From Oopsacas minuta (taxonomy: Eukaryota; Animalia; Porifera): a stretch of DNA of 64,000 bases. Below are positions 16,644 to 44,429 of this stretch, one piece after another. The position numbers and the translations under genes were made by a program. Location of the stretch: contig JAKMXF010000110.1 in assembly GCA_024704765.1 (NCBI GenBank), positions 1-64,000 of the forward strand. Direction: 5' to 3'. Every line of letters starts with the position of its first letter. Position 1 is the stretch's first letter. The notes beneath the pieces are model-generated. The model was not told the DNA's origin, did not search any database, and worked only from the letters and a program-made list of their open reading frames with translations.

Positions 16644-19600
16644 TTATTTGTATGGAAATCTTATAGGCTTGGAGTTAATCAATTTCCATATCCTGGGTGC
16701 TTTACTATCCAAATATTGATATTTATTAATAAATAAATAAATAAAAAACAAATAACAAACTTTGTCCTCAACTTGTTGAAGTTGATTAAAGAAATCATCT
16801 GTTAGATGACACTGTAAATCTTGTTTGAACTTACTCAGTTTACTTTGGTATACCACTAAATGTCTCCATAGTAAGTAGAGTGAGCTCTCTATTATACGGG
16901 TTATCAGTGATAATTCTAACTTGCTCAATTTATCAGATTCCTGAATCTAAGATAGAATATACAATCAATAAGATTGATATGGAGAAACAGTTCGAATCTG
17001 ATTACATGACTACTTAGCCTCTACTACATAATTACTAATATTCTGTCACAAACTACGTATGAGTAGTCCATAGTTGTCAATATATCTATCCGTGAGATTT
17101 GTTGTGTGAAGATCGGTTGAATACAACTATTCGTAATTCGTAAATGACATTTTTGGCGAATAAGAAATCTGCCAACCATGATGGCACTGAATGTGTATTT
17201 CGTTATGAATGAATGTAATAATTTCAATTTCCGCTGGGCAATACTGCGATGGCTGCCACACTTTTCATTAAGGCTGTGACATAGTTATACAATTCAGAAT
17301 CAAACTTACAATAGTAGTGGTGTAATCATTTATTATCTGTAATAATGACCCGATGGAGAGAGCAGATGTATGGATTATCGGAGACATCCCTGGACCTGTG
17401 GAGAGGAAATATGAAAATCATCCAATTCTAGACAAAATCATATCCACGTAAATGGACTCTCGTTATGTAATAATAATTATAATACAAATTCTGGCTAACA
17501 ATTAGAAACATTGACCATCTCTAGAGGTTCGTATTGAGACAATCTACTGTACATGCTTCTTCAATCTACATTTACCTGAAGATCCTATAGGAGATGTGAA
17601 ATCTATATTGAATAAGATCTTTGGTGTCGTAATATCCATATCTAGCCCTAAGAGACAAGTATATAACGTAAAGGGTATAAGTGAAAAATGAAGAGAAAAA
17701 CGTGTTAAGTATGTGATCATGAAATATACGAAATCAAAACTATTATCGTAGTTTCATAGTATATTACCATCTCTATTCATTGTTACAACAGCATATCTGA
17801 GAATAGAGTTAGCTATTTGTAGCGTGAAGAGAGTAGCCTCTCTCTTGACAGTCTCTGCTTCTCTACCTTCTGGTATGGCCAATTGTTTTAGAAGATTAGA
17901 TGTGTTAGATTTGAAGCAGTAGATCGGTAGCATGTTTAGCATGAGACGCTGTACACGTAGACATAGAACTATATTAAATTACAGCAGATTAACATTATAC
18001 ACAGTAATAGCAATGCAGTTGCTTTACGACATAATGCGACTAAGCAGCGAAGCGAGCTATGAAGATTGAAGTAAGTGGTTAGAGTTCTGAAGTGTTGGCA
18101 GTAGGGTCCAAGACCCGTTGGATGTGGTGTTATGTCATTTCGAAGCAGGATTCGAGTTGTTGGTTTGAAATTTGGACTTTGCCGTGACGGCACTTTAAAA
18201 GGAAATTGTTGGGTGACAAAATTACATTGAACCAGGATAGGATAGGATATTATACCTTTGAGAGGCTCTGAAGTAGTTTCAATATCAGGATTTGTAACTG
18301 AGGCCTGTTGCATGTAGTGAGCACAGGAGAGAGACAATAGACTACTAACTAAGCTCATTTCTTGTAGCCTTTCAAGGGTAGGAGTATTCGAGTGAGAACC
18401 GAGAATAGAGAATATTATCTCTGAATGACTGTTCACTAATTTTGTAACCTACATTATATACAATTATTGAAAGGCCATACAAATTTAATCATTTGTTTTC
18501 TGTCCGATTTCCTAGGAATGGCCCGGTGATGAGGACGACATTTATCTAGCTATTTATTGTAGCAGATAGGGATATTGAGTAAATTAGCAATTTGGAGGTA
18601 CATATAAGTATTAATAGTCCGCCTGATAGATATTGTCCAAATTTATGATTTACAATCTGGGAATTTGAAAATATACGAAGTGGCTTAGAGTGTTGGTAAC
18701 GGTACTCAACATTTTCCTAAAAGTGCCGGCAGCAGAGTTGGATGTGGTTTATGGTGTTTGGATGCAGGGCTCGAGTTGTTGAAGTGGGTATTTCCATTAG
18801 ATTAGTGATTATAACCCCTTTAGATGAGGTTTTTGGTTATTTTGGGACAGGCCTTGAGGTATTGGAGTGGGAATGTGGGGTTTTCTGTTGCCGGCACTAT
18901 GAGAAGAAAATTCGGATGCCCGAAACGGCACTTTAGCCACAGCCTTGATATAATCATTAGATTGTTTGTAAATTCTCATCTGCACATATAGTACATTAAA
19001 TATTGGTACAGACGGGGACGATAAATAAGTTTCTTATTTCACATGGACTAAATACAAAGATAAATAATAACTCTAGCTCTGTAAGTTACCTGGAAAATGA
19101 TATTATAGTGTCTCTTAGCTGCGGTAGAGAGTACAGTGAGTATAAGTCTGAGAAGTGGGAACAACAGCTGTGAATATGTTTGCACAGATTTAGAATTTAC
19201 AACAGGTGATACAGGCTGTAGTACACCAACTTCTGGACGTAAGTCTATGAAACTAATAGACTTTAATACCAATTATTCTAAAGCTAATAACAATACAGTA
19301 GACTCAATTAGAGGCCAGATCATTTGATATGATTGATAGGAGAATTTTAAGACTGATTACATGGTCTATATCTGGCCAAGTGACTTGATGCACATACTGT
19401 ATATGCATGGGCGTAGTCCCAGGAGGCCTGGTCCATGAGTTTATCTAGCTGATTCGCTGGAACCTAAAGTACCAATTCAGCAGCCATCAAGGACCCAAAG
19501 TGCCGACAGTGGGGCTCAAATTTGTACAGGATCAATATGTTACCGTCCAAAAAGTGTCACCCTTTCAGTCCTTGCAAGAAAAAGTCCGGAGACAGAATTC

Positions 19601-21186
19601 CTGGAAAAACACCTGGCCTGGCCCCCAAATATTTGTAAAACTGCATGTAAAAAATCAAAAACATCCTTGTACCCCAAATAATCTTTCTCCGGCTGTGTAT
19701 ATGTATAATTGTATTTAAATAAATTGTAAACAAGAATTACCTCATATTAGAAATCGTATAGAATAGGTTAGCTTGAGACAACAACTCAGGGCCTTTAATA
19801 CACATAGCTACTCGTGTTAGGAAGGACTAGTGAATATAATAGATTTGTAAGGTAATACGAATAAGGTTAATATAACAATCGTCATAGTTTGTTCCTCTTT
19901 CTATGAACTTTTAGCCTCTGTGCTTTAGGCTATACAGTCGAGTTCGCCAATTAGCAAGTCTTATAGTACACGAATTTCCCTTGCTGATATGATAAATTGC
20001 TATAAGGCGAATATTGTATTGCTAATAGGTGGGCAGTTAGACCATTGTATTGATTACTACAATCCCCATAGTGAACATTTGTACAAACTCACGATCTTTG
20101 CTTCATAAAAATAAAGCTCCAGAGTTGTTCTACCATGTCTTACACAGGTGACTAGCTGGTTATCCTGTTTCCAAATTGAGTCTACAATGTAGCGTAGATA
20201 TCCTAAGATGTTGATAGTCTTCAGCCAGTGGACATCCCCATCAAACAAAATTATTTGTTCCAAAAGAGAGAAGGACAGATTCTAAATATATAAAGATAAT
20301 ATTATATATGTATGCATATTGTTAGCAATACGTCAGCGGTATGGAGGGGTTCCATGGGTGAATAAGGTTGGAAACTGCTGCAATACGTGATATCAATAAC
20401 TGACCTGTATGATGTTGGTAGAGTCGAATGCATCTCTACAAACAATTTCAATCAATGAATCTCCGTATGAATTGAATAATGACATAGTCATGCTTTCTAA
20501 TGTTGTTATCCTACTCTCTCGCATATAAATATCTAGAAGAAGTAAATAACATAAATAATAGATACATAACAGTGTAATACTATGAGGATTCAATAGCACG
20601 TAGATAAGAATTCAAATTCTTTAATTTACATAGATTTAACGTGGACAGTGCATCTCATCATATTTTTCTCGAAATAACAATACATCGGTGAATGTAAATG
20701 TAATATCTTCAATAATGTTGAACATATTCGTAATTATTCAAATCATGAGTATTTAGGTAAATGTTTTTGAACTTTCTCTTTCGGGAATTCGGTTGCGGGG
20801 TTCAAGCCATTCGTTCAATGAAATTTGTGTTTAAAGTAACAATGTGAGCTTCTATGGACTAGAAGTATTAGTGAAATACTTTTAGATCTCAGCTGCATGT
20901 TGAAAGTATTCATTAGAGAAAAATCAGAATACAATTCAATATAGTTCATATTTGAAAAACAATATACTCTAGGACAGCGGTTCCCAACCTTTTTCACCCG
21001 TGGGGCCCTATCCCAATTTTAATACATCCTATGGACTCCCTGCTCTGGTCCATGGACCCCAAGTTGGGCACCGCTGCTCTAGGACATATTAAGCCAAAAC
21101 AGATTATCAAATGTTTATATCCTTAAGAGACAAAAAAACCCGATTTCGACTGTACAGAGTTTGATTGGTATATTAGCATATTGGTA

Positions 21187-21217
<31 letters not shown>

Positions 21218-24200
21218 TTATATTCTATATTGTGTAAGATGTAATATTATGATACACAACAGTAATATTTATAGACATGACAATCAGAGCACGATATATC
21301 TTCTTCAAAATATCAGTTAAAATGATTACATACACATAGTATACATATGCAATTGGACAAAGATTACATAAGGGTTTTTGTTTGGAATAATGAAAGTGAT
21401 ATACAAAGAAATTATTAATTATTCATATTGTTAGATAGATTATTCAGATAAATAACCTTGGCCTACAGTAGATTGAGTAAAAGACTGGATGATGGATCGT
21501 AATAATTCGGATTATCACAATTTTATAGATACAGTATATGAATATGTGAGCGCAATTTGTGGATGCACGGTTTCGATTTTCCTCTTTCTTATCATGGTCC
21601 TTTCGTTTATTTGGGCAATATATTTTATATTTCGACTAATAAAAGAATATAACTACTTGAAGTACCTCATGAAAATACGAAACTCATTTCTTGAAGATTC
21701 ATGGCTCAGCATAGTGAAAAATAGCAAAAGAAAAATCGTTAAAGCTAAATTCATCATCACCATTTGTATAACAGAATGGACTATAGGGATTTACCTTTTC
21801 ATTTCTGCAATGGCAACAGACTCAACGTATATCACAAGTGAGAAATCACACCAAGGAATCTACCAGAAAAATAATCTCTATTTCCTCATTCATGCAAGTT
21901 TAGATCAGAAATCAGCATGGTCATTTATGATGATTATCATTCTGATCTTGTTAATGCTAGTACGAAGTTTAACAAGATACCTCCGTCAACAGTATTCATT
22001 CTACAAAGATAAATCTTCAGATTTTAGAACAGCACTCAAATACAAATTACCTCTGATATTCTTTATCTTCCTTCTTGGCTTGTTTCCTCAGACAATAGTA
22101 ATTCAATGGATATTATATTTCGGTTCTTTTTCTTATGAATTAGTATGTTACACCAAAGAATGTAATAAACTATGCAACTTGCTATACAACAGGTATTTTG
22201 ATGCTAAAACACATGAATACCAATCTAAATATATTGTCAGGTTTTACAGAGGTGTATACTTAGAATTCAAAATAGGATCATGTATGCTTATAATGTCATT
22301 CTTCTTACAATTAATCAGCAGTATGTCAATGTCCATCCTCTACTCGGTACGATTAATGCTAATTTCTCCCAATAATTGGCTTCAAATCCTATTTATGAAA
22401 GGAAAGATTGACAACTCTCTATCAGCTTACCAACTACAAGAAGTAGACCTATTCTCAAAGTCCTATACTATGGTGCAATTATTTCTTTTAAGCATGAGCG
22501 AGGGTTTGCTAGTTATCCCATATGTTATTGTGTCTGTTAAGATTCTCTGTACTGCAATTAAATCATATTTCAATCAGAACAGAGATTATGAAAATCATGA
22601 CCTGATTCGAAGATTGATTGATAATAATAACAGAGCCTACTGAAATTTTGATGGAAGGCAAGGATTTACTTACTACTATCTTTGTATTTCATCTAAAGTA
22701 TAATGATTAATGAAGTATACTATACAATGTACGATTTAATATATATATATATTGAATAAATAATAAAATTTTCCAAATTTCCTAATATAAAATAGACGGG
22801 CCCAATCCATAGTTTTTCATTGCGAAACCTAATGGTCTTAATTAAATAAATTCAGCCTACTCGACTAATTGTCAGTCAATTTGGTTCGAGGGTAATTTAC
22901 CCAATTCACGGGGAGTCAGTACTAGCACCTATATATCTATTATAATGCATCAGTTTCCAATTTCAGTCACTTTCCATTGACCATCATTTCGACCATTCAG
23001 TAGTCATTGTTTCTCATAGAAATATTTTCCCATAATACCAATATCTAATGTAATATTTGTGCATATTATGAAAATGTACAAACCTTGTGATTCTCCCTCA
23101 TCTACTTGTCTTCTACACATCTGAAAATAGTATAGTAACACTCCATATAAATTAATACGAGTACTCTGTACTGATTTGTCTATATATGACAGCAGATCTA
23201 GGATAGAAGTTAGGAGAGGTTTCATGAGAGGAGTGTCCAGATGAACGGATTTAGAAGGATCAATGTCATTCTGTTTGTGTAGGTAAGCCAAATGAGAGAA
23301 TATAGTGAGTAGAGAGCTGGATAGAGCTGGGATTACTTCGATAATTATATTACGTGATAAGGCCTAGAAAATTGATAGTATTAAAAATTAATAGTATCGT
23401 ATATTCAGAGTATAAATGACCTTTTCTAATATGATAGTAGCTAACTCCAGGAGTAGAGGAAATTTTATTTCTTTTGGGAGGAGTTCTTCTTGACAGGAGA
23501 GGAGCATAGTGTCTGTCATCTGGTGCCAACTCTCAAATAAGCTCTTCTTCACTTCTGTCTGTTCCCTAGCTTGGTTCTGTTCCAAAGCGAATGAGAGGAT
23601 AAGTCTCATCTCCTAAAATACGAACAATACATAACAAATAAGCTAATAAGTATATTTACGTATGCTGGCTATGCTCTATGCTATGGTAAGACAGTACGTA
23701 AGAGAAAATGTTAGCCATTTTTATCACCTATTTCTAACCAACATAAAATGTAAAAATGTCTGGGATTTACATCCTGAATAATTTTAGCGAAATTACAAAT
23801 TACTTGGACCCTGCTCGTATATATATATTGCCTTTGATGGATAATGGGTAAGGTATATCCACCAAACAGACAATACCAAATATTAACATATTACAATAGA
23901 CTAACATCCAAAACATTTTGCCTCTGAGAGAGTCCAATATTTGCCATTGCCATTTCTTTATTAATGAATTTATGTAGAGACTTTATGTCTATGACTCTCA
24001 TTTCCATCAGATCAGACTTAGCTTGATGTTGTTGTATTAGCGTTAATATCTGCTCCTGATTGAAGTAGTTCAGCTCAAGGGGAGGTGGTATGACATCAGA
24101 AATGTCCATCTGTTTTAATATAGCAGATAGCTTCTTTACTGTCTTACCAGGAACAGATGGCTGTAAGATTACTTCCTCTTCTACTGCACGGAAACTCTTC

Positions 24201-30200: not shown

Positions 30201-33200
30201 TATCCTCAAGAATAATGAATAATTAATTTTAAATACTTCATAAATCATTGTACTTCATGAAGAATTCATGATAATTTAAGATATGCTAAGAATATAGTTT
30301 GTTGAGTGATTGAATAATACTATGCATCTAAGTTGACTAATGCATTGAAATATCCTCAAGAATAATGAATAATTCAAAATGAATTATTCATTTTTAACCT
30401 AGTGAATAATTCATTATTCATATTCATGAATTATTCATTATTTATGAATTAGTCAACTTAGGTTAGGAGCAAGAAAATTTTGAGAGTTAAGCGCGTGTCA
30501 CGCGTTTAGACTAGGCGCGCTGTATACGCCTAATTTTGACGAATAATGTAATGGTTTACGTAACAATCATAAAGGTCAATTTAATTGTATTATAGTATTT
30601 ATGAAGAATTCAGTTGAATTCATTAATATTGTAAAATATTTTAAAAGGTAAACTATTTATACTTATAGGGAGGAAGCTTGATAAATGATATTTAGGTCGA
30701 GCCCTAATACTACTGGTACTACATAGGAGAAACTTTAATTTTGCTAAGAGAGACAATGAATAGAGATAAATATACAATGTTAGGTCAACAGTTAATTATT
30801 AATGCACAATAAACGTATTTGTTTAGTGAAAGACTCTAGATGACACCTCTGGAATGTAGTATTAATTGTATTATATATAATGGTTATATGTTTTGCTTAA
30901 AATTTAAGTTTGATGCTTCGAAATTCAAATAGTCTAGGCGGGTAAGTGAAATCGAGAACTCATTTAGGCGCGCTGCATATAAAAGCATGAAGAAACCTTG
31001 AATGCAACCTAACGAACAAAAGTGTGAGTAACTCAGTTTGTGACTTGGATGTGCTGTCAATTTATTATAATTATAGAAGTGTATAGTGAGAACAGGGCAT
31101 TTTTATAATTTTTGATGGGGAATTTCTTTATATTTTTACTGGACGCAACAGCATGAAGATACATTAAGATATAATTATTTACTACGTACTCCTGTGTGTG
31201 ATGGTTGAAAGAAGGGTACATAGTTCAGTTGTAAGTAGAAGAAGTCTTTAGAAGAACGTAGGTATCTTAGAGTAGCTGCTGATAAGTCTACATGAGAGCA
31301 AAGAGTGTATAGCACCTGGTAAGCAAGCTGTGAGAATATAGGAGCATATGAATGACATGTAAAGTGGTTGGATGCAGTTGGAGGAGGAGAGATAAGATAG
31401 AGGATAGCGTGTAGACAGGTGCGTTGATTGCCGGCTATACCTGAAAGGAATTTCATTCATAAATTAGATGGCAATTACAAGTACAAGCGTAAGTTCATTA
31501 ATCTATGAGGCCATGGGGTATCCGGAATTGTTTGGAATCGTAATTATCTAACCATAAACCCAAATGTGTAATTAGAAGTGAATTGCCCTATTCCGGCTCT
31601 TCTGTGTTTTGTAAGGAGGAAAAATCCTGTTTTCTACAATGATATTTTCTGGTAAACACTGTCATATAAGGTTTGTAATCAGTCGAATTATCACTTGCCA
31701 ACTTTGACATCATACAAAAATACAAATTCAACGGGCAAATACATATAACTCCCTGATATTGTCGCAATTAGAGCCATTTTGGGTGGGCACGTGCCAGATT
31801 TGGCTCCATCATTATACAAAATTATAGGACGGGTGGGCATGACGTCATATTTCTCCACCCTGACTCATAAGTCCAGTTGCACTAATGCTCCCTGAGAATT
31901 AGTAGTAATCATAATAGAGTAAGAAAAGTAACACAATCAAACCTGGATCTTGCAGTACAGTGTCCCTCACAGGAGCCCTTGTTTCAAACCCCAACAGAAA
32001 GTGAGCTAGATTGGGTGCGGGAGTGTTGATGTTAATAAGGATCAGCTGTAGGATTCTGATACGGATATGACTGCTTGTAATTGAGCTAGTTACATTTCTA
32101 TCTTCTACAAGATGGAATATTAAAAAGGAGTAAACACTCTTACAATTCTAAGTAAGTATATATTATCAAAACATACTTATCAACACATTTACAAATTTCC
32201 CGGGGTTTTACACGAAAATATCTAGAATTTTCCAAAATAGAAATTCCCCAGGACATGGAGTGAAACCCCCGGACGGTTGGCAAGTAGGGCTGAAGTGAAT
32301 TTCGAAATCATTACAAATGAATGTTTTACTAAACGAAATAATACTCGAAAATTCGTTCGTAAGCATATAACACCCTCAACGGAATATCAGATCAAATTCC
32401 AGATATATGTGAGCTTAACGCTATCAAATAGATAATTAGTACTGAAATGTCTACATAGATAATTCTGCTCAGGTGATAGGCAGTAGATGTCAACATGTTC
32501 TGTAAAATATATGAAGATAGGTTGTCTTACTACTTCTACTAATCAATTGACAGTTTTATATTCCTACTCAACCAGAGAAGAATCTATCTCTTAACCACTT
32601 TAAGAAATAAACGAGAAGAGATAAGAGCTAATCAGGTGGCAAGTCAGCAAATGAAGCAACCGTTAGAAGAGACCGCTCTCATGTGATAGGTAAATGTCAC
32701 ACAATCTGCTCCACTACATATCAGATAGAATTATGGTGGAACTCATCTCAAGCACTGAGGTTTTTTGTGACACAAAAGAACTCGAGGAGAGCAATTCCAG
32801 TCTAGGAGAGATCACCAAAAACGAGATCCTTCCCATCCTTCCTATGTCAGTAATCCCTAATTACCTGTATTCCAACAGCCAAATGTTGCTGCTGGGAAAT
32901 AAGGATCAGCTCCTGAGGAGTTTAATGGGGCACGAAGTGTCACAATTAACCTTGAATCTGGACACATTTATGTGGCAATATGTGCAACAGTCATATCCAA
33001 ATATTCTCTCAGACAGGAGTCCATATATCAACCATTAGGTGATCAACATTAGAAACATCCATGGGGTATCCTAATCTATGAGGATAACATTTATGTCACG
33101 GACAGAGAACATCACGCTATCTTCTTATTCAAGCTACCTGACCTAACAATGATAAAGCAAGTAGGGAAGGGAAGATCTGATAACCAAGAATTCAATCATC

Positions 33201-36200
33201 CTAGACAACTCGCCATCTCTTCGAATCAACACCTATATGTGTCAGATGATGAAGACGACAGACTCCAAATCCTAACTACTATCCTGGAATTTCAAGACTA
33301 GCTACAACGCCAAACTATGACTCTACCTGTTGATGTAAAGTTCTCAAACAATGAAATATTTGTGTGAGATTTGATGATAATCCATGCATTCACGTGTTTA
33401 CTATGTCAGGAGAGAATTCCGGTCCTTAGTTACCAGAGGACTAGGAATGCAAGTTGGAGCAGCATTATTCTTCTGTTTATATGGACATAACAACATTCTC
33501 ATAAGCAACCGCTTAGCTCACGATATAAAAGTATATTCACTAGAAGGAGACTTCCTACATAAGATAGCACAGAGAGGACATAAAGCGGGAATGTTTCAAA
33601 ACCCTTACGGCATTACAATACACAACAACAAAAACTCATTTGTATTTCTTCTAACATGAATTACCATGTGTACGCATATTTTCTAACAAATTGTATTACT
33701 ACTATTTCAAACATTAAATTAGCTCATTAACTGGTTTATTAACTACTAGAGCACTCGCTTGCTAGATCGCTGCGTGACGGGTAGATGTATCCTTGAGCAT
33801 TATGCCTTGTTTGAACTTAAGTATGAAACAGCCAGAGCATTAAAGGAGCGCACACACTGCAGCGCGCTACTATATAATTGCAAACAACTTACAAATATCA
33901 TCATGATTCTGCAAAGATTCAGTATTCTTGCTATAAGAAGTGGATGCTGGGACAATTTTGTATAATCTACAATTTATTGAAATGGTTTGATGTTGCACAT
34001 TTCAATGGTTAAATTCAATCCTGATGACTTAAAATACAAATCTAATGAGAATCTGAAAGAATGAAAAGGAGAGAGATTGGAGCGTGTCCATCGCTCTATT
34101 TGGTAATTAGTGTGTATAATAGTAAATTTCTTGCAAAATACGATTAGCTAATAGGGGTTTCCACCGTATTCGTTTAGCTTACTTTCGACAAGTATGAGAA
34201 AATTAATGAAAGTCTTACAAATGAATAAGTTTAATCAATTAAGTAATATTACTATAGAATAAATCATTATATTAATTAATTTTAGGTTTTTGTGATGAAG
34301 AAACTAATCATAATTATAATTTATTAAACTTTCAGTTCATAATAGAAGTTAGATTACATGAATGTATACTAAAACAATTTCTAAAAAAAGTGTGGAATAT
34401 AGAGTAAAAGCAGTCTTGCCAATTTTTTATTAATGAATCTTGCATATATAAATAAGGAGGATGTCACGAATTAGTTATAATTATTGAACAAATGAATTAT
34501 ACAAGCATTCCTGAGGATAAAATCGCAGTACCAATAGTGCTATCTTTAGTGTGTTTCATATTCTGTGTGTTAGCTACAATAGTTTTAGTATATTTTGTAC
34601 ACAGAAGATACTCTTTGTGTTTAGAAATAAAGGAATTAACTTCTGAAAAACTATGGTTTGCTAGCTACCATAATCATATGAAGAATCTTAAAATACAAGT
34701 CATGATATCAAATTTCATTATTCTAATCATCCTTATAGAAATACTGAATAATATTGCAAATATTTTTATTAACGTTGGTTTAGTACTGCCTTACTACCCA
34801 GAAATTATATCCACGGCGATATATGTCAGATGTTACTCACAGTACTGCTATGTACCTCTTCTGTGCCTGCTGTTGAAGGTAATCTGGTTAGCATATTTTC
34901 ATGTTCCGTACAAATACACAATAATGAGATGGATAGCTTATATTGTCCTTAGATCAATACTTATCTACCTTGTATATGGAAGGGTATTAAGCGAGTTAGG
35001 TACAAGTTACGATCTGCCTATATCTATATTTTACTTGAACATGATGACAGCCTTCATAACCGTGGACCTGATTACATATTTGGTATATTCTCGCCGGTTA
35101 TATCTACATTTGAAAAGCAGAGAGTTGGAAGCTAAGTTATTCATGGATAGAACGCAATATCTCCAAAATAAAAACATTCGTATTCATTTCATGGTTGCCA
35201 CTATCCTCGTCGCATTAGCACTTTTCTTCTACAATTTGATGAGTATTTTAAGTAGCATATCCGTTGTAGTAACATGTATTTTGTATCTTTTTTCCTTTAA
35301 AACATTCCTAGATGAATGGTATCTACTTGATCAATGGATAAATACCTACGCCATGGAATCTTGTCAGATAATGTACAGAATACTGTTAAACCTGAATTAC
35401 TTGTATGTATTCTTAGCAATAGTGTATAAGTATTGTAGACAGAAACGCAACCTGAAGAGAGTAAATGATAGTATCAGACCTATTGTCAGAGGATATCAAG
35501 ATAAGCTATACTCCAGATACAATAGATATTATTAAAGGAATCATTGAATTATTAGTAGATTATTGTCCTATATTTATTAAAAATTATAGATTTGTATAAT
35601 ATTTGATATTAATGTGTACACTTTTATCAAGTCAAACAGGTGAATAGGGCTAAAAGAGCTCTTTTATATCCCTGGTTCATGTCTATTTGGTGCAGCTATC
35701 AGTATATATTATTAACAAGATAGAGAATGTACCTTTTGAAAGAATATCACTCTCTTCATAAGTCTCCCAATCCTCTACTTCTACTCTCTGAATGAATCCA
35801 GCTAGAATATCACTAGACACCAGTGGGTCATGTGTCAGTATGAAACACAACTGTTTTGCTATAGAAGGGTTGTTTGAGACTGAACATAGAATGTTAACAG
35901 CTGAGAGAGCTAGTTCTGGGGAGAACAGTTGCAAACTCACAAACCTAGAAAATCAATAGTTAACAAATGTATAAACATATTTCGAGTTCGTTTATCAATA
36001 TATTCATGCAATACAAGACTACAACTGACATAGTGATAACCATGAGATGATCAGCTCGGTTAGTAGTTGGATTCAATCCTAACAGAAGGGAGTCGAGTGA
36101 AGAGAGGAGAGCATGACTTCCTACACTACTGTTAAGCTTCCTGAACACTTCTCCCTTCTCTAGTCCTTCCTCCAACAGCTGTAGACTGAGCAGACAAGCC

Positions 36201-38105
36201 CTGTCTACGTGGTGAGATTTGACAGCTAGACAGCAAATAAATTGAATTAACGTGCAAGCTTTCATATTCCATAATATTAGAATTTCAGGCTTAAGAAATC
36301 CTATAAAAACTAATCTATAAATGAAATGTTGTCAGACTACATTGATTTGCTAATTGCTTAAATATGTCCCCAAAGTTCTACAAATTATTTGTGTGCTCGG
36401 ATGCCAGAATTTCGTTACAGAAATATGTTGAATCGGTTCATTTTCAGGCGCTCCTCTAGTTGTTGGAATGGATTTTTGCCATGGATCAATGCCGAGAAAC
36501 GAAATGTATGAAATCCCTGAGTACTGTATGGATATTAACTGAATTAAGAATAAATGTACGAGTTTTGAGTACCTCTAACATCATCCTCTTCTTTAAGAAT
36601 TTTAAATCCAGAATGCAGAGTAGCTAACAGCTGATGCAAGAAAGGAGAGTCGTGTAGTAAATTCATAAGTACAATAGAACCAGCACTATCAGACATAATC
36701 ACTTCATCTGACATTCTAGTAGGTATTGATTCTGGAGAGTATGCCTTCACAAGTTTTACGATAATCTGTAATACATCACAAAGCATCTCCCACTACATAT
36801 AAGGTATTTATAATTACAGTCAACTCCTGTTATAACCCAGTCCGATATTACGTGATTCTTTACCACCAATAGCTTGAAATTAATAGATTTACTATATATC
36901 ATAATAGCTGGAGATTATCTTACTTTTTCTTCTGGATTATGATAGGTTCTCTTGTTAATATTGAGGTACACTTCGTCAATAAGGAAGTTGAGATAGTTAG
37001 TGAAGTTTAATTTGTCAGGTATTGGGTGCTCAGTCAGCTGGTCTAGAAGGTGTAGAAAACCGCAGGTTTCAGGGTATGTTTCATTTCTAGATTCAACTTT
37101 CTGTAATTCAAGCTAGAAATGTGAAGAGGATAAATTATATCTCAAAAACAATCAAATAATTCTTACAATTATTCCTTGTGTGTATTTAGTAGGCTGTATC
37201 TCTGGCTTAGCAATAATATTAATTCCTTCCAGAGCCTGCCATGTGAGAACCCCAATCTCTGGAGATATGTTCAGATTAGCCAATAAATTGAATATCTCAG
37301 CTTTAAGAGTACAAGGAATTGGACAGGCTACTAGAGAGGTTAATGTTTGTAGAGGCTGCCAGGTAGGATGCTCTATCAATGAGATACGAACTGTTTGATC
37401 CTAAACCAGATAAGAGAATATAACGTAATTAGTTTGAATAAATGTATTATAATGAATAAACCGTTTGTAGCTGTCGGCATTTTCATACTAGGCATATACC
37501 TCTTCTCATAGTGATTATCGTTTTGCGTTTTTGCGGATTACAAAACTCATTTTTGCTTCAGTAATTTGGATAATCAGGAATTTCTGCAAATTTAAGTAAC
37601 GTAGCCCAGTTTATTCACCCTTACAGTTATTTTGCTAGCCATCAAGTATATTTATTGCAGAAAGAGGAAACAGCAGTTCATGAAAAGAAATTGATCCTCA
37701 ATGAATAATTTGAATATACTAAAATGCTACACTAGGGGGTTGACAATTCATATTATCCACGGTATCATGCAAATATATGTTAGAGCTAGTTCAACATACC
37801 CATTTGGCTAAAGATGCCAATAATTTTAATACAGCATTCATAGCTTCTAATTCATTAGATGTCATGTGAGCCTGACCAACTGTTCCGTGTACAGAGAAAC
37901 TATTCGCGTACTGCTTCATAGAGTTGAAAAGATGGTCTAAACTAACATAGCTGCCAGTGTAGGAAGAGAATGCACGTAGCAGAGCGAAGCAATGCTGAGC
38001 ACTTGCAGGGCCACAGGATAATCCGTTCAGCATGGTTAAGTACACAGTAAACATGTCCGGCTGGAGATGTTCTCCATACGAACGCACAAAGTTGAAAAGT
38101 GCGGT
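16644..38105 (-). CDS. NUP205: Nuclear pore complex protein Nup205 (middle and C-terminal exons; 5' exons lie upstream of 38105; exact 3' end unresolved)
   Basis: Phase-consistent exons: 38105-37800, 37400-37167, 37112-36924, 36792-36573, 36225-36030, 35944-35733, 32104-31943, 31440-31190, 24394-23906, 23612-23421, 23363-23084, 20532-20405, 20281-20093, 19826-19741, 19252-19090, 18448-18256, 17968-17768, 17647-17576, 17395-17310, an unresolved exon ending at 17036, then 16946-about 16761. Recalled Nup205-like motifs occur in order: [108 protein letters not shown]. Confidence 0.88.
18717..18936. mobile_element. MITE-like repeat in a NUP205 intron, with a diverged second copy at about 18070-18200
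   Basis: TIRs ctaaaagtgccg / cggcactttag. The internal segment ttggatgtgg...cagg..tcgagttgtt is shared with the neighbouring intron. Confidence 0.5.
20975..21076. mobile_element. 102-bp hAT-like MITE with a perfect 8-bp TSD
   Basis: TIRs cagcggttcccaac / gttgggcaccgctg. TSD ctctagga on both sides. Confidence 0.9.
21489..22643 (+). CDS. Orphan intronless 7TM-like membrane protein (384 aa), nested antisense in NUP205 intron 23083-20533
   Basis: Seven hydrophobic segments by eye, with a basic loop between TM5 and TM6. Shares KF....I..EW and IPY patterns with 28364-29428. Confidence 0.8.
   Translation: MMDRNNSDYHNFIDTVYEYVSAICGCTVSIFLFLIMVLSFIWAIYFIFRLIKEYNYLKYLMKIRNSFLEDSWLSIVKNSKRKIVKAKFIITICITEWTIGIYLFISAMATDSTYITSEKSHQGIYQKNNLYFLIHASLDQKSAWSFMMIIILILLMLVRSLTRYLRQQYSFYKDKSSDFRTALKYKLPLIFFIFLLGLFPQTIVIQWILYFGSFSYELVCYTKECNKLCNLLYNRYFDAKTHEYQSKYIVRFYRGVYLEFKIGSCMLIMSFFLQLISSMSMSILYSVRLMLISPNNWLQILFMKGKIDNSLSAYQLQEVDLFSKSYTMVQLFLLSMSEGLLVIPYVIVSVKILCTAIKSYFNQNRDYENHDLIRRLIDNNNRAY
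24944..25663 (+). CDS. Signal-peptide-bearing cysteine phosphatase (PTP/DSP-like, CX5R), intronless, nested in a NUP205 intron
   Basis: N-terminus [20 protein letters not shown] resembles a signal peptide. Catalytic loop [13 protein letters not shown], with NYLFRGNMP upstream. Confidence 0.8.
   Translation: MKFKILILAIFCYINVPVLGEDFHPIRTRLIDTFKGKYNINYLFRGNMPVLDNKFCYDKLMQNLGEVLQKHNMTLPTNSYMLDITYINSYIPGESKDYGIEELFWDENSNLGRLLHWPIIGSTIRPPGDNTVIKFVIKEYMERSIDRLDLKLPSLHHLLTTEYADVSLIIYTHCEAGVDRTGEVSGAYYMQFLNVTFENAVKVDNSIINRDMYVDSRNELQWYCYYLKFVKGVKNLVCV
26242..26844 (-). CDS. CDC42: Cdc42-like Rho GTPase, intronless (200 aa), nested on the same strand in a NUP205 intron
   Basis: [33 protein letters not shown], the Cdc42-type TQID, ECSAK, and a polybasic tail with CAAX (CLLL). 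Orthologue versus paralogue is not resolved. Confidence 0.88.
27842..28192. mobile_element. hAT-like MITE with a perfect 8-bp TSD and subterminal TGACCCGG repeats
   Basis: TIRs caggcttgggccgggtca / tgacccggtccaagcctg. TSD ctaagtgc at 27834-27841 and 28193-28200. Several gacccgg motifs near both ends. Confidence 0.92.
28364..29428 (+). CDS. Orphan intronless 7TM-like membrane protein (354 aa), nested antisense in NUP205 intron 31189-24395
   Basis: Seven hydrophobic segments. [13 protein letters not shown] and FIPY motifs align with the 21489 paralogue. Confidence 0.8.
   Translation: MLDLWIKIAIVLIVLAIIILYCFLTIVFCFWCIYLLDAIIRKRKYYISSSRCLEGEHNSHQELLAYNAKTELVKYVFLYLMNILEWLGATFSMIQGIIPLIHLYYDRANATNVHHAILGNYNIPDFDTFCIIQSIVLVGSLCMYLAARQAKKSWIKANRLPYIFCIFLLCSIVTYITTSFCYNSIIGEWLFSLLLTVSVIFALKQYRKLNMVINWIIVDLKVSQRKKLLAEQIRMKRAFNITFTMLWSGIIFILASVYLSAVTETLEITFRKYDTSVFYLSQCKHSYDTNLDVYYIITILSWSDVVLSIIGVNLIFIPYISYGLSTMFVVLWRLCKGRTGYKTHFRNPLYAPLI
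29715..29879. repeat. Minisatellite of 15 x 11-bp units, ATACGGTTA(A/T)T
   Basis: Unit order ABAAABBAABBAABA, where A=atacggttaat and B=atacggttatt. Confidence 0.95.
30178..30461. mobile_element. Mutator-like (9-bp TSD) non-autonomous element with an internal direct duplication
   Basis: TIRs ttaagttgactaattcat / atgaattagtcaacttag. TSD gttaggagc at 30169-30177 and 30462-30470. The segment gaaatatcctcaagaataatgaataatt occurs twice inside. Confidence 0.8.
32694..33686 (+). pseudogene. Decayed NHL-repeat gene nested antisense in NUP205 intron 35732-32105
   Basis: NHL motifs across frames (HIQIFSQTG; [17 protein letters not shown]; [19 protein letters not shown]; [13 protein letters not shown]; [10 protein letters not shown]), broken by at least 3 stops and at least 3 frameshifts. 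Confidence 0.85.
34492..35535 (+). CDS. Orphan intronless 7TM-like membrane protein (347 aa), nested antisense in NUP205 intron 35732-32105
   Basis: Seven hydrophobic segments, short N-terminus, [10 protein letters not shown] in TM2, basic loop [10 protein letters not shown], and C-terminal RPIVRGY...RYY. Confidence 0.8.
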   Translation: MNYTSIPEDKIAVPIVLSLVCFIFCVLATIVLVYFVHRRYSLCLEIKELTSEKLWFASYHNHMKNLKIQVMISNFIILIILIEILNNIANIFINVGLVLPYYPEIISTAIYVRCYSQYCYVPLLCLLLKVIWLAYFHVPYKYTIMRWIAYIVLRSILIYLVYGRVLSELGTSYDLPISIFYLNMMTAFITVDLITYLVYSRRLYLHLKSRELEAKLFMDRTQYLQNKNIRIHFMVATILVALALFFYNLMSILSSISVVVTCILYLFSFKTFLDEWYLLDQWINTYAMESCQIMYRILLNLNYLYVFLAIVYKYCRQKRNLKRVNDSIRPIVRGYQDKLYSRYNRYY

Positions 38106-38690
38106 CTAAACAAAAGGAAGAGAGCATATTAACATTTATTACACAATATGGTATAATAAAACTCAAATGATTTATTAAAGGGATAAATTCTAGTAATTTT
38201 TATGGAATTAACAAAATGTTATGCTTTCATTGCAACAATCATAAACAAGTTATGCAATAAAAATTATAATTTTCTATGAATACTGCTAAAGATTGAAACT
38301 ATTAAATAATCTTAGCTGACAAAGTCAATTATGAAAAAATACTAATAAGTATTTTTTTGTTAATTCGTAGGCTGACAGGAAATAATTCGAGAAACATTTT
38401 AAGCGATTTTCGTGCAGCCAAATTTCTATAACCTCACATAATTGCCGTTGACTCACATGTTCCATGACCTCAATTAAGTTGGCCTTAAATAATTCGAAAT
38501 TTGTGTTAGGTGTGTAAGATTAAGTGTACAGACACAACAGGACAAGCAAAAAATCTACGTGTTTGTATAGGTTATGATCATAATATACAAACTAGTGGAT
38601 CCACACAGATAAATATACACGAATAGTCTGAACACATAGAAACTAAAGAGACCGATAACAAATCTATTTATGAAGTAATCATAAGCTAGT

Positions 38691-40712
38691 CTAATCGTCA
38701 GAACATTCCTCATCAGATATTATATCAGGAAGTTCTATATCTTTTGTTGCTGCAAACAGTTCAGTAAGTCCTGTCAAATCCTCAAGGAAAGAAGTTTCAT
38801 TGAAAACCTGCATTAAAAAGTCAAATCCTTCATTCTTGTACTTCTCTATGACAATGCTGGAGCAGCCAGTACATGATGCGAATAGTTCTCCAATCGGCTG
38901 TACAGTTTGGAATCGAGACAGAAACCCTCGTATTTGATGCGGTATAGCACCTAGTATGCATTGTGAGTCTGCCTCCTCTCTCCCATCAGCAGGAGCTCGT
39001 CCCATAAGAGGATGTTGCAGCAGAGATACAGCTAACTCCACTGCGAGAGAAGAAGTGATGTAAGCCATGCCTGGTCTACTCACAGTGCACTGCTGATCTA
39101 GCGTTCTATCTCTAGTTGAGTTGGTAGGAGCTACGATGTCATTACAGAAGTAGCAACCAAGTTTCTCACCAGGAATAACTCTCTTCTCCCTAATGGCCTC
39201 AACTTCATCCACCACCCCACCCCTGACACCATGTCTCATCACTAGATAAGTATCAAACCCCATAGCAGCGTTAATACAAATCTTATTCAAGGCGTAACAT
39301 AGTACAGTAGGTAGCCATCTAGCCTCTCTCGTATCTAGCAGCAGAAATATAATATCATGCTGTTGTACTAAATCCTCCAATTGAGCTACATCAGATTTGA
39401 TAGCTCTTAGCTCTCCCTCACTAACTGGGTGTCCTGGCATAGGTATAGATATATTAAATCCTCTGGAAGATACACCGGGAAATATCCGTTTAAGTGCATC
39501 AGCTGCAGCCTCTGATTTGCACTTCCCCCCATTCAGTGAGTCTTCAAAAGTGAATAAACTTTGTCTTACTGGATTAGAGAATGCTACCTTACCGTTATCA
39601 ACTAATGTTATATGTCGTACACCCCAGCCTAGCAAACATCTAGCTACGTTACAGCCTAGTGTACCAGCTCCTAACAGCAAGCATCTAGCATCTCTCACGA
39701 TATTAAGGTTAAGCTCTGGTACTAGTCTCCAACGCATAAGTTTTAAATTCAAATCTACAGATTGTTCTGATAATCTCTCTGGATTCATTGTAGAACTGAG
39801 ATTGACAGATTTCGGACCTAGCTTCTGTTTGTCGTTACGTTCCCAGCCTGTGCACTTGGGGACCTCGTCCCGCTGACTCAAGTCAGGTAATACAACCTCT
39901 TCTATGTAGAGACTGTGTCCTATGTGTCTCACGCCCTCGTAAGATCTGTCTCTGAGACAGAGAACATCTATACTCTTTCCCTTCCAAATCCGGGCAGCTA
40001 GAATGAGGAGATTCCTCAGCGGCCATCCAGGGTGCTCTTCAGAGGTACACGGATCACAATAGCAGAGTATAGGCATATCTCCCTCTGAATAGAACGTACT
40101 GTGATCTGATAATTTAGCTAAATTGAATTCTCCTGAATTATTCTTGAGTAGAAAAACACCACTGAAATTATGTTGAGGGCGAAAACCATCATAAACATGA
40201 GTGAATTTCTGTATAACCTTCCCATCCCATAATTTCTCTAACATTATACACGATCGTACTGTTATAGGTTCATCTGGCATCAAGGCAGTGAAACCAAACC
40301 AAAAAGTAAAGTTGTGTTTCTTTAGGTCTGCAAAAGCGATCATCAAAAATGAGATCAATAAACTTGGATTATCAATAGCTTTGTTTGATTTTATCGCTTC
40401 CCATTTCTCTACACTTTCCTGTTCCAGCAAACTCTTTTTATCCAGCTGATTGAACTTCTCTACTGTATTAGTATTCATGATATGACCAGGTGCTTTAAAA
40501 TAATTCTGTGGTAATGATGCATCTTCCTCAAACACACTGTAATCTAAAGAAATTCTAGGATTGAATCCGATAGGATCTGAATTGGTGAATGTAGCTGATA
40601 TTGGAATCTTTGATTCATTGAGTTGTATTGTGTCTAGCTTTTTCTGTGAAAATGTATGCCAAAAACTTGAATCAAGACTGCTTGAAAATGGCATAAACTG
40701 TAATATACTCAT
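38691..40712 (-). CDS. ATG7: Autophagy E1-like enzyme ATG7, intronless (673 aa)
   Basis: N-terminal FSSSLDSSFW, VDLNLKLMRWRLVPEL, CLLLGAGTLGCNVARCLLGWG, NPVRQSLF, LGCYFCND, TRDRTLDQQCTV, and catalytic-Cys region CTGCS. Confidence 0.97.
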   Translation of the reverse strand: MSILQFMPFSSSLDSSFWHTFSQKKLDTIQLNESKIPISATFTNSDPIGFNPRISLDYSVFEEDASLPQNYFKAPGHIMNTNTVEKFNQLDKKSLLEQESVEKWEAIKSNKAIDNPSLLISFLMIAFADLKKHNFTFWFGFTALMPDEPITVRSCIMLEKLWDGKVIQKFTHVYDGFRPQHNFSGVFLLKNNSGEFNLAKLSDHSTFYSEGDMPILCYCDPCTSEEHPGWPLRNLLILAARIWKGKSIDVLCLRDRSYEGVRHIGHSLYIEEVVLPDLSQRDEVPKCTGWERNDKQKLGPKSVNLSSTMNPERLSEQSVDLNLKLMRWRLVPELNLNIVRDARCLLLGAGTLGCNVARCLLGWGVRHITLVDNGKVAFSNPVRQSLFTFEDSLNGGKCKSEAAADALKRIFPGVSSRGFNISIPMPGHPVSEGELRAIKSDVAQLEDLVQQHDIIFLLLDTREARWLPTVLCYALNKICINAAMGFDTYLVMRHGVRGGVVDEVEAIREKRVIPGEKLGCYFCNDIVAPTNSTRDRTLDQQCTVSRPGMAYITSSLAVELAVSLLQHPLMGRAPADGREEADSQCILGAIPHQIRGFLSRFQTVQPIGELFASCTGCSSIVIEKYKNEGFDFLMQVFNETSFLEDLTGLTELFAATKDIELPDIISDEECSDD

Positions 40713-42942: not shown

Positions 42943-43085
42943 CATAATAGCTGTTCTAGGGTTCCTGGAGGCGCTTCTAAATTTGTGAGTTCTGACAAAT
43001 ACATTCTACAAAATTCAGATCTTAGCTGTTTGTATAATGTATGCGCTTCTTTGCACTCTTTACTACTTCCCAGAGATTCTACCAT
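42943..43085 (-). CDS. Candidate exon, possibly NUP205 N-terminal region
   Basis: Open frame ESLGSSKECKEAHTLYKQLRSEFCRMYLSELTNLEAPPGTLEQLL ends at a strong donor (TG|gtaagc). Weak resemblance to the recalled Nup205 segment KQLRN..ARM..EPP..LEHL. Junctions are not resolved. Confidence 0.4.
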
Positions 43086-44109
43086 GATATTAAGTCATTT
43101 TCCTACTTCGCATATTTCTTTAGGAGAATTTCAACCTTGTTTCTTGGTCATTTACCTAATTTTCAAATTTCTCAGGTCAATTATTTACTCATCAATATGT
43201 TTGTTAATTAGGTAAATTACAGCGTATCGTTCCTGGATATTAGTAACATGCTTACTCATATGCTAGAAATTAAATAAGATTATCTGATTTAAGTAAGGTA
43301 GCAAATCATATAAGTTCCACATCATTATCATGTTAGTAATGTTCGAGGAATCAAGTCTGGAAGCACTAATTAGTAACTAACATCATTTCATGTTTATTAA
43401 TAAAAAAAAGAAGTAATAGACAGAAAGTAAGATTATGTGACAAACAAATTCATGCAATTAGTTGAGGTAGGACAAAACATTTGCAACATAAGTAAATGCT
43501 TACAAATATCAGGTGCTTTCATGTCTGATAGGTATGCCAGCATTACACAAAAACTCCGGAATATGTGGCGAAAGCTATCTAATAGTTCAATCTGACCGTA
43601 GAATTTGTAGTCCAAATGGCAACAATTAACGTTCAGTGTGACGTGCATGTATTCACACTTTTTAAATCTGTTGATAGATATGTCCATTTGTACGCGTATC
43701 TTGCCAACCATAAGCTCACAATACACAATGAGTTGCACCGTGTATGGCAGTTGCATGCAACAAATTTACATCGTGTATGGTAGTCTTAAGAATTTGTAAA
43801 TTGCAACCTGCAAACACATTAGGGGTTCATAAAGTGCAGATAGTAAGACTCAAATTTGTATATGATTATGTTTCCATCTAAAAAGTGTTCATGCAATATA
43901 ACAGCCAGCCCAGAAATTCTTGGATAACACTGAAATACATGTGCCTCCTATAATAGCATACATCAGAGAATTTTTTGTATAATTTCTATGCTTATATGGT
44001 TTAGGCATAAATATATTCTATGAACCGGTCAGATGTAACCGTAGTAAATAGTGTCGTCTCTAAAATGAGCAGGAATAACAGCTAGCAGGAATTGATTTTA
44101 CATACTTAC

Positions 44110-44262: not shown

Positions 44263-44429
44263 CTATATAATTGAAAATCCAATAATTAACTTAGCATGAT
44301 TAAGATACATCCAATACAAACTGAAAGCATTCAAGAAATTATAGAGTATATATAGATAGAAGGAATAGACTACAAAAAGTAAGAAAAGCAAATTGTCAAA
44401 AAAGAAATATAATAACAATCTTATACAAA

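What the first reader, a model, noticed from the sequence alone, without database searches (positions are those of the whole stretch)
16644..40712. NUP205 acts as a host gene with at least six, probably seven, genes or pseudogenes in its introns
Seen: phase-consistent NUP205 exons flank introns 23083-20533 (7TM-1), 31189-24395 (phosphatase, Cdc42-like, 7TM-2) and 35732-32105 (NHL pseudogene, 7TM-3). The exon join across the 6.8-kb intron (…PSHTG|[22 protein letters not shown]) keeps frame and Nup205 colinearity. Guests are all intronless, mostly antisense, with Cdc42-like on the same strand. Inference: introns of an essential nucleoporin serve as landing sites for young or retroposed genes. 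This raises questions of transcriptional collision and of how the host reads through same-strand guest polyA sites.
Basis: partly seen in the sequence, partly recalled or inferred. Interest (0 to 1): 0.75.

Follow-up and report, generated by a model that had tools for sequence, protein, structure and literature searches.

The report
Glass-sponge NUP205 hosts many nested genes
In a glass sponge, the single gene for the nuclear-pore protein NUP205 spans about 80 kb because four of its introns hold some fifteen other genes; this is an extreme, evolutionarily old case of the gene-within-gene layout already reported for glass sponges.

Summary
The core observation holds. Minus-strand NUP205 exons flank three long introns (2,551, 3,628 and 6,795 nt) with canonical GT..AG sites and matching phases. 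These introns hold five intact intronless ORFs and one NHL-family pseudogene.

Two corrections:
- The ORF at 38691-40712 is ATG7, not NUP205.
- NUP205 does not start in the window. Its N-terminal exons (residues ~7-496) lie 54 kb upstream, at 91.9-97.2 kb of the same contig and strand.

The predicted junction 91902>38105 is phase 0 on both sides and implies a 53,796-nt intron. That intron holds ATG7, seven kinase ORFs and a TM3-like ORF. Both splice sites and this layout recur in several other glass-sponge assemblies, and one of them links both halves on a single contig about 58 kb apart.

Guest content turns over between species. Rho, the phosphatase and ATG7 are old and under purifying selection. 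TM1, TM2 and the NHL remnant are missing from one relative. TM3 is missing there but is shared with a closer relative.

There is no sign of retroposition. No RNA evidence was reachable, so splicing is inferred.

The genome statistics match Oopsacas minuta. Abundant nested genes in glass sponges are already published (PMC10282587). The scan holds other nested-gene notes for this genome.

The parts
16644..38105 (-). NUP205, 3' three-quarters (about residue 490 to the stop). At least 17 exons, approximately: 38105-37800, 37400-37167, 37112-36924, 36792-36573, 36225-36030, 35944-35733, 32104-31943, 31440-31190, 24394-23906, 23612-23421, 23363-23084, 20532-20405, 20281-20085, 19252-19072, 18448-18256, 17968-17787, 16946-16644.
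   Evidence: Nup192 profile positions 470-1619 are colinear. tblastn of P0007, P0008 and P0012 is colinear. Splice sites were solved with phases. Exons are 66-93% identical to those of other glass sponges. Boundaries of the last five exons are approximate, and small exons may be missing.
38106..64000 (-). 3' part of the predicted 53,796-nt NUP205 intron (38106 to C110:91901), which continues beyond the window.
   Evidence: The donor AAACAG|GTTAGA has its last exon base at C110:91902. The acceptor TTTGTTTAG|ACC has its first exon base at 38105. Both are phase 0. Both sites are invariant in the other glass-sponge assemblies compared (four for the donor, three for the acceptor), and conservation collapses inside the intron. 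Splicing itself is inferred.
38691..40712 (-). ATG7 (autophagy E1-like enzyme), 673 aa, intronless. Same strand as NUP205, and its stop codon is 585 nt upstream of the NUP205 exon at 38105.
   Evidence: Pfam ATG7_N 6.7e-86 plus ThiF 2.2e-39. It is 83-88% identical to orthologues at the same position in relatives, with pN/pS 0.11-0.14.
44430..45449 (+). Intronless protein kinase ORF, a guest in the giant intron (antisense to the host).
   Evidence: Pkinase 1e-50. An orthologue sits beside ATG7 in relatives.
51182..52198 (-). Intronless protein kinase ORF, a guest in the giant intron (same strand as the host).
   Evidence: Pkinase 9.9e-51.
58660..59850 (+). Intronless protein kinase ORF, a guest in the giant intron (antisense to the host).
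   Evidence: Pkinase 6.7e-58.
32105..35732 (-). NUP205 intron of 3,628 nt (phase 1) holding TM3 and the NHL pseudogene.
   Evidence: GT..AG with matching phase. The orthologous intron is 376 nt with no guest in ERZ25072740.
34492..35535 (+). TM3: intronless 347-aa multi-pass membrane ORF, antisense to the host.
   Evidence: Intact ORF. At least 8 intact paralogues are dispersed in the genome. An orthologue lies in the same intron and orientation in ERZ25071281 (55-57% identity, pN/pS 0.42). No Pfam match.
32543..33632 (+). Pseudogene of the expanded NHL / six-bladed propeller family, antisense to the host.
   Evidence: tblastn of an intact 427-aa paralogue gives 51-71% identity, with several in-frame stops and at least two frameshifts. 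The family has more than 150 matches in the genome.
24395..31189 (-). NUP205 intron of 6,795 nt (phase 0) holding TM2, the Cdc42-like GTPase and the phosphatase-like gene.
   Evidence: GT..AG with matching phase. The orthologous intron in ERZ25072740 is 3.8 kb and holds the Rho and phosphatase genes but not TM2.
28364..29428 (+). TM2: intronless 354-aa multi-pass membrane ORF, antisense to the host.
   Evidence: Intact ORF. At least 9 intact paralogues at 33-56% identity lie elsewhere in the genome. Absent from the orthologous intron of ERZ25072740. Atlas hits to GPCR-like clusters score only 0.84, so they are a lead only.
26242..26844 (-). Cdc42-like Rho GTPase, 200 aa, with a CAAX end. Same strand as the host.
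   Evidence: Ras family 8e-43. The best solved-structure match is Cdc42 at 276 bits, against Rac1 at 255. It is 88% identical to the orthologue in the same intron of ERZ25072740, where it is antisense. pN/pS is about 0.10.
24944..25663 (+). Phosphatase-like ORF of 239 aa with an [10 protein letters not shown] (CX5R) motif and a hydrophobic N-terminus. Antisense to the host.
   Evidence: DSPc 7.7e-5, below Pfam's cut-off. Single copy in the genome. It is 66.5% identical to the orthologue in the same intron of ERZ25072740, with pN/pS 0.23. No match among solved structures.
20533..23083 (-). NUP205 intron of 2,551 nt (phase 1) holding TM1.
   Evidence: GT..AG with matching phase. The orthologous intron is 278 nt with no guest in ERZ25072740.
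21489..22643 (+). TM1: intronless 384-aa multi-pass membrane ORF, antisense to the host.
   Evidence: Intact ORF. At least 9 intact paralogues at 25-41% identity lie elsewhere in the genome. No Pfam match.

Best explanation
This is the single NUP205 (Nup192-family scaffold nucleoporin) gene of a glass sponge whose genome statistics match Oopsacas minuta. It runs on the minus strand from about C110:97.3 kb to 16,644, a span of about 80.7 kb with at least 24 exons. Most of its introns are 54-900 nt. Four are long (2.6, 3.6, 6.8 and 53.8 kb), and each is long because it contains other, independently encoded, intronless genes.

The most likely mechanism is ordinary cis-splicing. RNA polymerase II transcribes the whole unit, the spliceosome joins the conserved donor and acceptor across each gene-filled intron, and the guests are transcribed from their own promoters. 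Nine guests plus the NHL pseudogene are antisense and six are on the host strand.

Guests arrive by insertion or duplication of members of expanded intronless families and of transposons. Some persist for very long periods and others are lost or decay.

Shown here: the exon map, splice-site sequences and phases, conservation of sites and layout across species, guest identities, and purifying selection. Inferred: that the long introns, above all the 53.8-kb one, are actually removed from one pre-mRNA, and that the guests are separate transcripts.
For: - The Nup192 profile matches occur only on this contig. They are colinear, and each part of the protein is encoded once.
- Three full-length NUP205 proteins align colinearly. 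Residues 438-496 end at 91884-92069 and residues 487-604 start at 38117, so nothing is missing or duplicated at the 53.8-kb gap.
- All four long introns have GT..AG sites with matching phases.
- The donor (CAG|GT) is invariant in five glass-sponge assemblies and the acceptor (TAG|AC) in four. Similarity vanishes immediately inside the intron.
- In ERZ25072740 both halves lie on one contig, same strand and order, about 58 kb apart.
- The N-side layout (Mpp10, NUP205 N exons, kinase) recurs in five other assemblies. The C-side layout (ATG7, then the exon at 38105) recurs in at least four.
- There are no N runs in 101 kb.
- Both halves are under purifying selection, with pN/pS 0.07-0.18.
- Orthologous introns that are short and empty in a relative prove these positions are introns.
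- Glass sponges are reported to have about 12% nested genes (PMC10282587).
Against: - No transcript evidence could be reached. No hexactinellid full-length NUP205 protein appeared in the 1.84-billion-representative search.
- A 53.8-kb intron is about 160 times the reported mean intron of this genome (341 bp, PMC10280926).
- It contains five same-strand genes whose polyadenylation sites the host polymerase would have to ignore.
- The exon at 38105 has a conserved in-frame Met 17 codons in.
- Spliced-leader trans-splicing is reported in another glass sponge (PMC10282587), so a separately expressed C-terminal gene is not excluded.
- My exon model sums to only about 1,765 codons, so some small exons are unplaced.
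Confidence: 0.75

Rival explanations
1. Gene fission: glass sponges express NUP205 as two separate genes. One is an N-terminal protein of about 500 aa from 91.9-97.3 kb. The other is a C-terminal protein of about 1,300-1,500 aa from 16.6-38.1 kb, perhaps using the acceptor at 38105 for a spliced leader and starting at the conserved Met 17 codons into that exon. ATG7 and the kinases would then be ordinary intergenic neighbours, and only the three shorter introns would hold nested genes.
For: The gap is 53.8 kb in a genome with 341-bp mean introns (PMC10280926). It contains nine intact ORFs, five of them on the host strand. The Met codon in GACATGTTT is conserved in the relative compared. Spliced leaders are reported in A. 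vastus (PMC10282587). No RNA evidence is available either way.
Against: The donor at the end of the N-terminal part is invariant in five assemblies, although the read-through peptide and stop are not conserved. A conserved donor needs an acceptor. The break falls at a phase-0/phase-0 junction inside the N-terminal solenoid, with no residues lost. Order, strand and linkage are kept in O. minuta and in ERZ25072740, the one relative where both halves could be placed, across synonymous-saturated divergence. An in-frame TAG sits directly before the exon in all four assemblies compared, so there is no longer genomic ORF.
Confidence: 0.13
2. Intermolecular trans-splicing: the two halves are transcribed separately, the C-terminal half possibly as read-through from ATG7, which always sits 0.5-2 kb upstream on the same strand. 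Their pre-mRNAs are then joined at the conserved donor and acceptor.
For: It explains the conserved donor and acceptor without transcription across 54 kb. ATG7-to-exon adjacency on the same strand is kept in every assembly seen. The only AATAAA hexamers after ATG7 lie 35-70 nt before the acceptor.
Against: There is no positive evidence. From general knowledge, genic trans-splicing is rare in animals. Microsynteny is generally high in glass sponges (PMC10282587), so the adjacency needs no special explanation.
Confidence: 0.05
3. Artefact or decay: a misassembly joined unrelated pieces, or NUP205 here is a broken pseudogene.
For: The O. minuta assembly is a draft of 365 scaffolds. Its public annotation is reported to handle nested genes poorly (83 nested genes against 2,432 in A. 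vastus, PMC10282587).
Against: The same layout occurs in independent assemblies of other glass sponges. There are no gaps. It is the only Nup192-family locus in the genome. All exons have open frames and pN/pS 0.07-0.18.
Confidence: 0.02

Closest known systems
Nested (intronic) genes of glass sponges, as reported for Aphrocallistes vastus with comparison to O. minuta (Francis et al. 2023, PMC10282587)
   Same: Single-exon genes lie inside introns of multi-exon hosts in a small, compact genome. Many are conserved between glass sponges. The O. minuta annotation under-reports them.
   Different: That paper does not mention NUP205 or nucleoporins. This host carries about fifteen ORFs plus a pseudogene in four introns. 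One intron of 53.8 kb holds nine ORFs, and guest coding sequence (about 14.8 kb) is nearly three times the host's (about 5.3 kb).
Classic host/nested gene pairs in large animal introns (for example Drosophila and mammalian intronic genes; from general knowledge)
   Same: Guests lie wholly within one intron and have their own promoters. Antisense orientation is common. Guests are gained over evolutionary time.
   Different: Here the genome is 61 Mb with a mean intron of 341 bp, so the long introns exist essentially because of their guests. Six of the fifteen guests share the host strand.
Metazoan NUP205 / fungal Nup192 (Pfam PF11894)
   Same: Colinear match over profile positions 45-1619 and to full-length animal NUP205 proteins of 1,948-2,033 aa. 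Single copy.
   Different: The gene structure only. Nothing suggests a different protein function. The complete spliced protein was not assembled or searched here.

Membership tests
NUP205/Nup192 family (PF11894) | Significant, colinear match to the family profile along the protein | tested here: met
   Nine exon-wise matches cover profile positions 45-1619 in order on one strand. Six pass the cut-off (five alone, one with its neighbours in frame), and the best is 8.6e-18. tblastn of three full-length NUP205 proteins is colinear.
NUP205/Nup192 family (PF11894) | One continuous mRNA and protein of about 1,900-2,000 aa | not testable with these tools
   No transcripts were reachable. Exons were searched one by one and never joined. 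Summed exon lengths give about 1,765 codons, so some exons are unplaced.
Host gene with nested intronic genes | The guest lies wholly between two exons of the host that are consecutive in the protein | tested here: met
   GT..AG sites, matching phases and consecutive residues occur across all four long introns. Two of these introns are short and empty in a relative.
Host gene with nested intronic genes | Host exons are spliced together across the guest | not testable with these tools
   Supported only indirectly, by conserved donor and acceptor sites.
Host gene with nested intronic genes | Guests are functional genes, not chance ORFs | tested here: met
   Pfam domains are present for ATG7, Rho and the kinases. 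pN/pS against orthologues is 0.10-0.42 for Rho, the phosphatase, ATG7, a kinase and TM3. TM1 and TM2 have intact ORFs within families of intact paralogues, but no orthologue was examined for them. The NHL copy is a pseudogene.
Retroposed gene copies | Intronless copy of an intron-containing parent gene | tested here: not met
   Most paralogues of the TM and NHL families, and the closest Rho paralogues, match as single uninterrupted open frames. About 60% of the transcripts in this genome are single-exon (PMC10282587).
Retroposed gene copies | Poly(A) remnant downstream of the copy | tested here: not met
   The maximum is 9-11 A in any 15-nt window within 800 nt downstream, equal to the background mode of 10-11. 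Target-site duplications were not searched.
Cdc42 subfamily of Rho GTPases | Closer to Cdc42 than to Rac or Rho, with a CAAX end | tested here: inconclusive
   Cdc42 chains score 276 bits against 255 for Rac1. The CAAX-like end is CLLL. Two paralogues at 64-66% identity exist, and no tree was built.

The most novel reading that the evidence does not exclude
Glass sponges no longer make NUP205 from one pre-mRNA. Either the scaffold nucleoporin is assembled from two separately encoded polypeptides (about 500 aa plus about 1,400 aa), or its mRNA is made by trans-splicing two transcripts whose genes have been held about 54-58 kb apart in cis, in the same order, across a synonymous-saturated divergence. 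In the trans-splicing case the C-terminal transcript possibly rides on ATG7 transcription.
Probability: 0.15. Interest if true: 0.8.

Novelty: new member of a known kind. Interest (0 to 1): 0.42.

Why it matters
Nested genes are a published hallmark of glass-sponge genomes, so the principle is not new. This locus is a clear and extreme example. An essential single-copy gene has introns that hold nearly three times more coding DNA than the gene itself, including a 54-kb intron in a genome where introns average 341 bp.

The layout is old and shared among glass sponges, while individual guests come and go. It therefore offers a natural series for asking three questions:
- How guests are gained and lost.
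- How a host transcript passes six same-strand genes.
- How automatic annotation breaks such genes.

Tried and rejected
- Looking up the window's own proteins in public contigs gave nothing, because the genome's own records are withheld.
- The big representative search with the exon at 38105 returned no full-length hexactinellid NUP205, so no transcript-level evidence was obtained. Its second hit, P0002, is a 3,397-aa repeat protein with no real similarity.
- The word search with that exon found only exon-sized ORFs from genomic assemblies.
- Poly(A) hexamers downstream of guests occur at background frequency, so they say nothing.
- No inverted repeats flank the Rho gene to explain its inversion between species.
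- No Rfam families or tRNAs lie in the window.
- The Atlas search for TM2 gave only sub-threshold GPCR-like leads.
- The phosphatase has no relative among solved structures.
- No further convincing ORFs were found in the gaps of the giant intron.
- Misassembly and pseudogene readings were rejected on cross-species conservation and selection.
- The third word search and structure prediction were not used, because the TM family is the subject of a separate finding.
- The contig is not human (61-Mb glass-sponge genome), so the human-contig rule did not apply.
Full report
**Source of the window**

The window is G000:C110:1-64000 of a genome of 61,460,524 bases in 365 contigs. It has about 33% GC. 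These statistics equal those published for the glass sponge Oopsacas minuta (61.46 Mb, 365 scaffolds; Table 1 of PMC10282587). An earlier scan note also called it a glass sponge. It is not human, so the human-contig rule did not apply.

**Check of the observation**

A six-frame search with the Nup192 profile (PF11894) found matches only on this contig. All are on the minus strand and in profile order:
- 37764-38102: positions 470-606
- 36918-37400: positions 595-760
- 31965-32081: positions 987-1027
- 31217-31447: positions 1032-1107
- 23939-24355: positions 1145-1257
- 23118-23618: positions 1273-1419
- 19087-19269: positions 1556-1619

tblastn of three full-length animal NUP205 proteins (P0007, P0008, P0012, obtained) gave the same colinear map.

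| Junction | Intron length | Phase |
|---|---|---|
| 35733\|32104 | 3,628 nt | 1 |
| 31190\|24394 | 6,795 nt | 0 |
| 23084\|20532 | 2,551 nt | 1 |

All have GT..AG, pyrimidine tracts and matching phases.

The guests are as described:
- TM1 at 21489-22643 (+).
- A phosphatase-like ORF at 24944-25663 (+), with a CX5R motif. Its Pfam DSPc match is 7.7e-5, below the cut-off.
- A Cdc42-like GTPase at 26242-26844 (-), with Ras family 8e-43. The best solved-structure match is Cdc42.
- TM2 at 28364-29428 (+).
- TM3 at 34492-35535 (+).
- An NHL-family remnant at 32543-33632 (+). Compared with an intact 427-aa paralogue it carries several in-frame stops and at least two frameshifts.

The ORF at 38691-40712 (-), which the finding's span includes, is a complete intronless ATG7 (ATG7_N 6.7e-86, ThiF 2.2e-39). 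It is not part of NUP205.

The first quarter of NUP205 is missing from the window. The profile and the full-length homologues place residues ~7-496 at C110:97244-91884 on the same strand. The exon that ends ...RRPSAKQ at 91902 is followed by GTTAGA. The exon that begins [13 protein letters not shown]... at 38105 is preceded by TTTGTTTAG. Both are phase 0.

In the homologues these two exons abut, at residues ~496 and 487. The simplest reading is one intron of 53,796 nt.

That interval holds nine intact ORFs:
- ATG7.
- Seven intronless protein-kinase ORFs: 44430-45449 (+), 51182-52198 (-), 58660-59850 (+), C110:71185-72066 (+), 81264-82244 (-), 86879-87871 (-) and 90140-91096 (+).
- A 383-aa membrane ORF related to TM3, at C110:65877-67028 (-).

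No other convincing ORFs lie there. There are no N runs in the 101 kb examined.

The locus therefore spans about 80.7 kb, with roughly 5.3 kb of host coding sequence and 14.8 kb of guest coding sequence. The first conserved exon (…DFTNAFWSPFKELL…) has no in-frame ATG in any species, so a small upstream exon remains unplaced.

**Evidence from other glass sponges**

Exon-sized ORFs from ENA assemblies of related sponges were found and their contigs were read.

In ERZ25072740 the N-terminal exons and the exon orthologous to 38105 lie on one 843-kb contig, on the same strand and in the same order, about 58 kb apart. Mpp10 lies upstream, kinases lie inside the gap, and ATG7 sits directly before the exon.

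- The N-side layout (Mpp10, NUP205 N exons, antisense kinase) recurs in ERZ25766962, ERZ20067936, ERZ25072730 and ERZ25069837.
- The C-side layout (ATG7, then the exon) recurs in ERZ25071281, ERZ26869290 and sponge metagenome scaffolds.
- The donor CAG|GT is invariant in five assemblies and the acceptor TAG|AC in four. Similarity collapses immediately inside the intron.
- Against ERZ25072740, synonymous sites are saturated (pS 0.69-0.87). pN/pS is 0.07-0.18 for NUP205 exons of both halves, 0.10 for Rho, 0.23 for the phosphatase and 0.11-0.14 for ATG7.

Misassembly and pseudogenisation are therefore excluded, and the arrangement is old.

**Turnover of guests**

- In ERZ25072740 the introns orthologous to those holding TM1 and TM3/NHL are 278 and 376 nt and empty.
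- The Rho and phosphatase genes are in the same intron there, but Rho is inverted (antisense there, sense here) and TM2 is absent.
- A 466-aa sugar-transporter gene sits in an intron that is only about 500 nt in this window.
- Of the two ~98% identical contigs from that assembly, only one carries a DDE transposase inside a NUP205 intron.
- In the closer relative ERZ25071281 a TM3 orthologue lies in the same intron and orientation (55-57% identity, pN/pS 0.42). An LRR/EGF gene occupies an intron that is 85 nt here.

TM1, TM2 and TM3 each belong to dispersed families of intact intronless paralogues. They are not orphans within the genome, although no Pfam family matches them.

The NHL family has more than 150 matches. 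The phosphatase is single-copy.

**Test of retroposition**

- Poly(A) remnants do not exceed background.
- Most paralogues match as single uninterrupted open frames.
- Most genes of this genome are single-exon (PMC10282587).

The 'retroposed' label is therefore unsupported. 'Young' fits TM1, TM2 and the NHL remnant at most.

Orientation counts are as follows. Over the whole gene, nine ORFs plus the pseudogene are antisense and six ORFs are sense.

**Mechanism**

I commit to one cis-spliced gene with independently transcribed guests (confidence about 0.75 for the 53.8-kb junction, higher for the three shorter introns).

What is shown is sequence-level: the exon map, the splice signals and their conservation, the linkage, and the selection. 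What is inferred is the splicing itself and read-through of same-strand poly(A) sites. Poly(A) hexamers occur at background frequency and decide nothing.

The main rival is fission into two genes. It is possible because spliced leaders exist in glass sponges (PMC10282587) and a conserved Met lies 17 codons into the exon at 38105. The conserved donor at 91902 argues against it.

No transcript evidence was reachable. The exhaustive search found no full-length hexactinellid NUP205.

**Comparison with what is known**

Francis et al. 2023 (PMC10282587) report 2,432 nested genes (12.4%) in A. vastus, many of them conserved. They attribute the count of only 83 in O. minuta to annotation settings. NUP205 is not mentioned there or in the O. 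minuta genome paper, which gives a mean intron of 341 bp.

The finding is therefore a new, extreme member of a known kind. The scan also holds other nested-gene notes for this genome.

Noticed in passing
window:29671-29921: A minisatellite of about 16-17 copies of an 11-nt unit (ATACGGTTAAT/T) inside the 6.8-kb NUP205 intron, between TM2 and the upstream exon.
   Followed up: no
L013:11733-12593 versus L014: In the relative ERZ25072740, one of two ~98% identical contigs carries a 286-aa DDE_3 transposase ORF inside a NUP205 intron. The other contig lacks it. This looks like an insertion polymorphism showing how intron guests can arrive.
   Followed up: partly
window:26242-26844 versus L014:17785-18384: The Cdc42-like gene is on the host strand in this genome but antisense in ERZ25072740, within the same intron. 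No flanking inverted repeats were found here.
   Followed up: partly
window:33384-33659 and genome-wide: The NHL / six-bladed-propeller family is hugely expanded: 553 first-look candidates and 150 scored matches, mostly intact ORFs of about 420-460 aa, several on this same contig. Another weak family match lies at window 909-1328 (+).
   Followed up: partly
C110:65877-67028 (L009:1877-3028, minus strand): A 383-aa multi-pass membrane ORF with no Pfam match is a distant relative of TM3 (about 23-26% identity over most of its length). It lies in the giant intron on the host strand.
   Followed up: partly
L022 (ENA ERZ26869290 ctg294339): This contig repeats NUP205 exons (those orthologous to 38105-35963) several times in alternating orientation. 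It looks like a palindromic assembly artefact and was not used as evidence for layout.
   Followed up: no
C110:97092-97259 and orthologous loci L015, L019, L020, L027: The first conserved NUP205 exon has no in-frame ATG in any of five species, and a stop or non-coding sequence lies just upstream. A short unplaced 5' exon (or a leader) must supply the start codon.
   Followed up: partly
window:38106-38690: After the ATG7 stop, the only AATAAA hexamers lie 515 and 551 nt downstream. That is 35-70 nt before the NUP205 acceptor at 38105, so the ATG7 3' end and the host splice site are crowded together.
   Followed up: no
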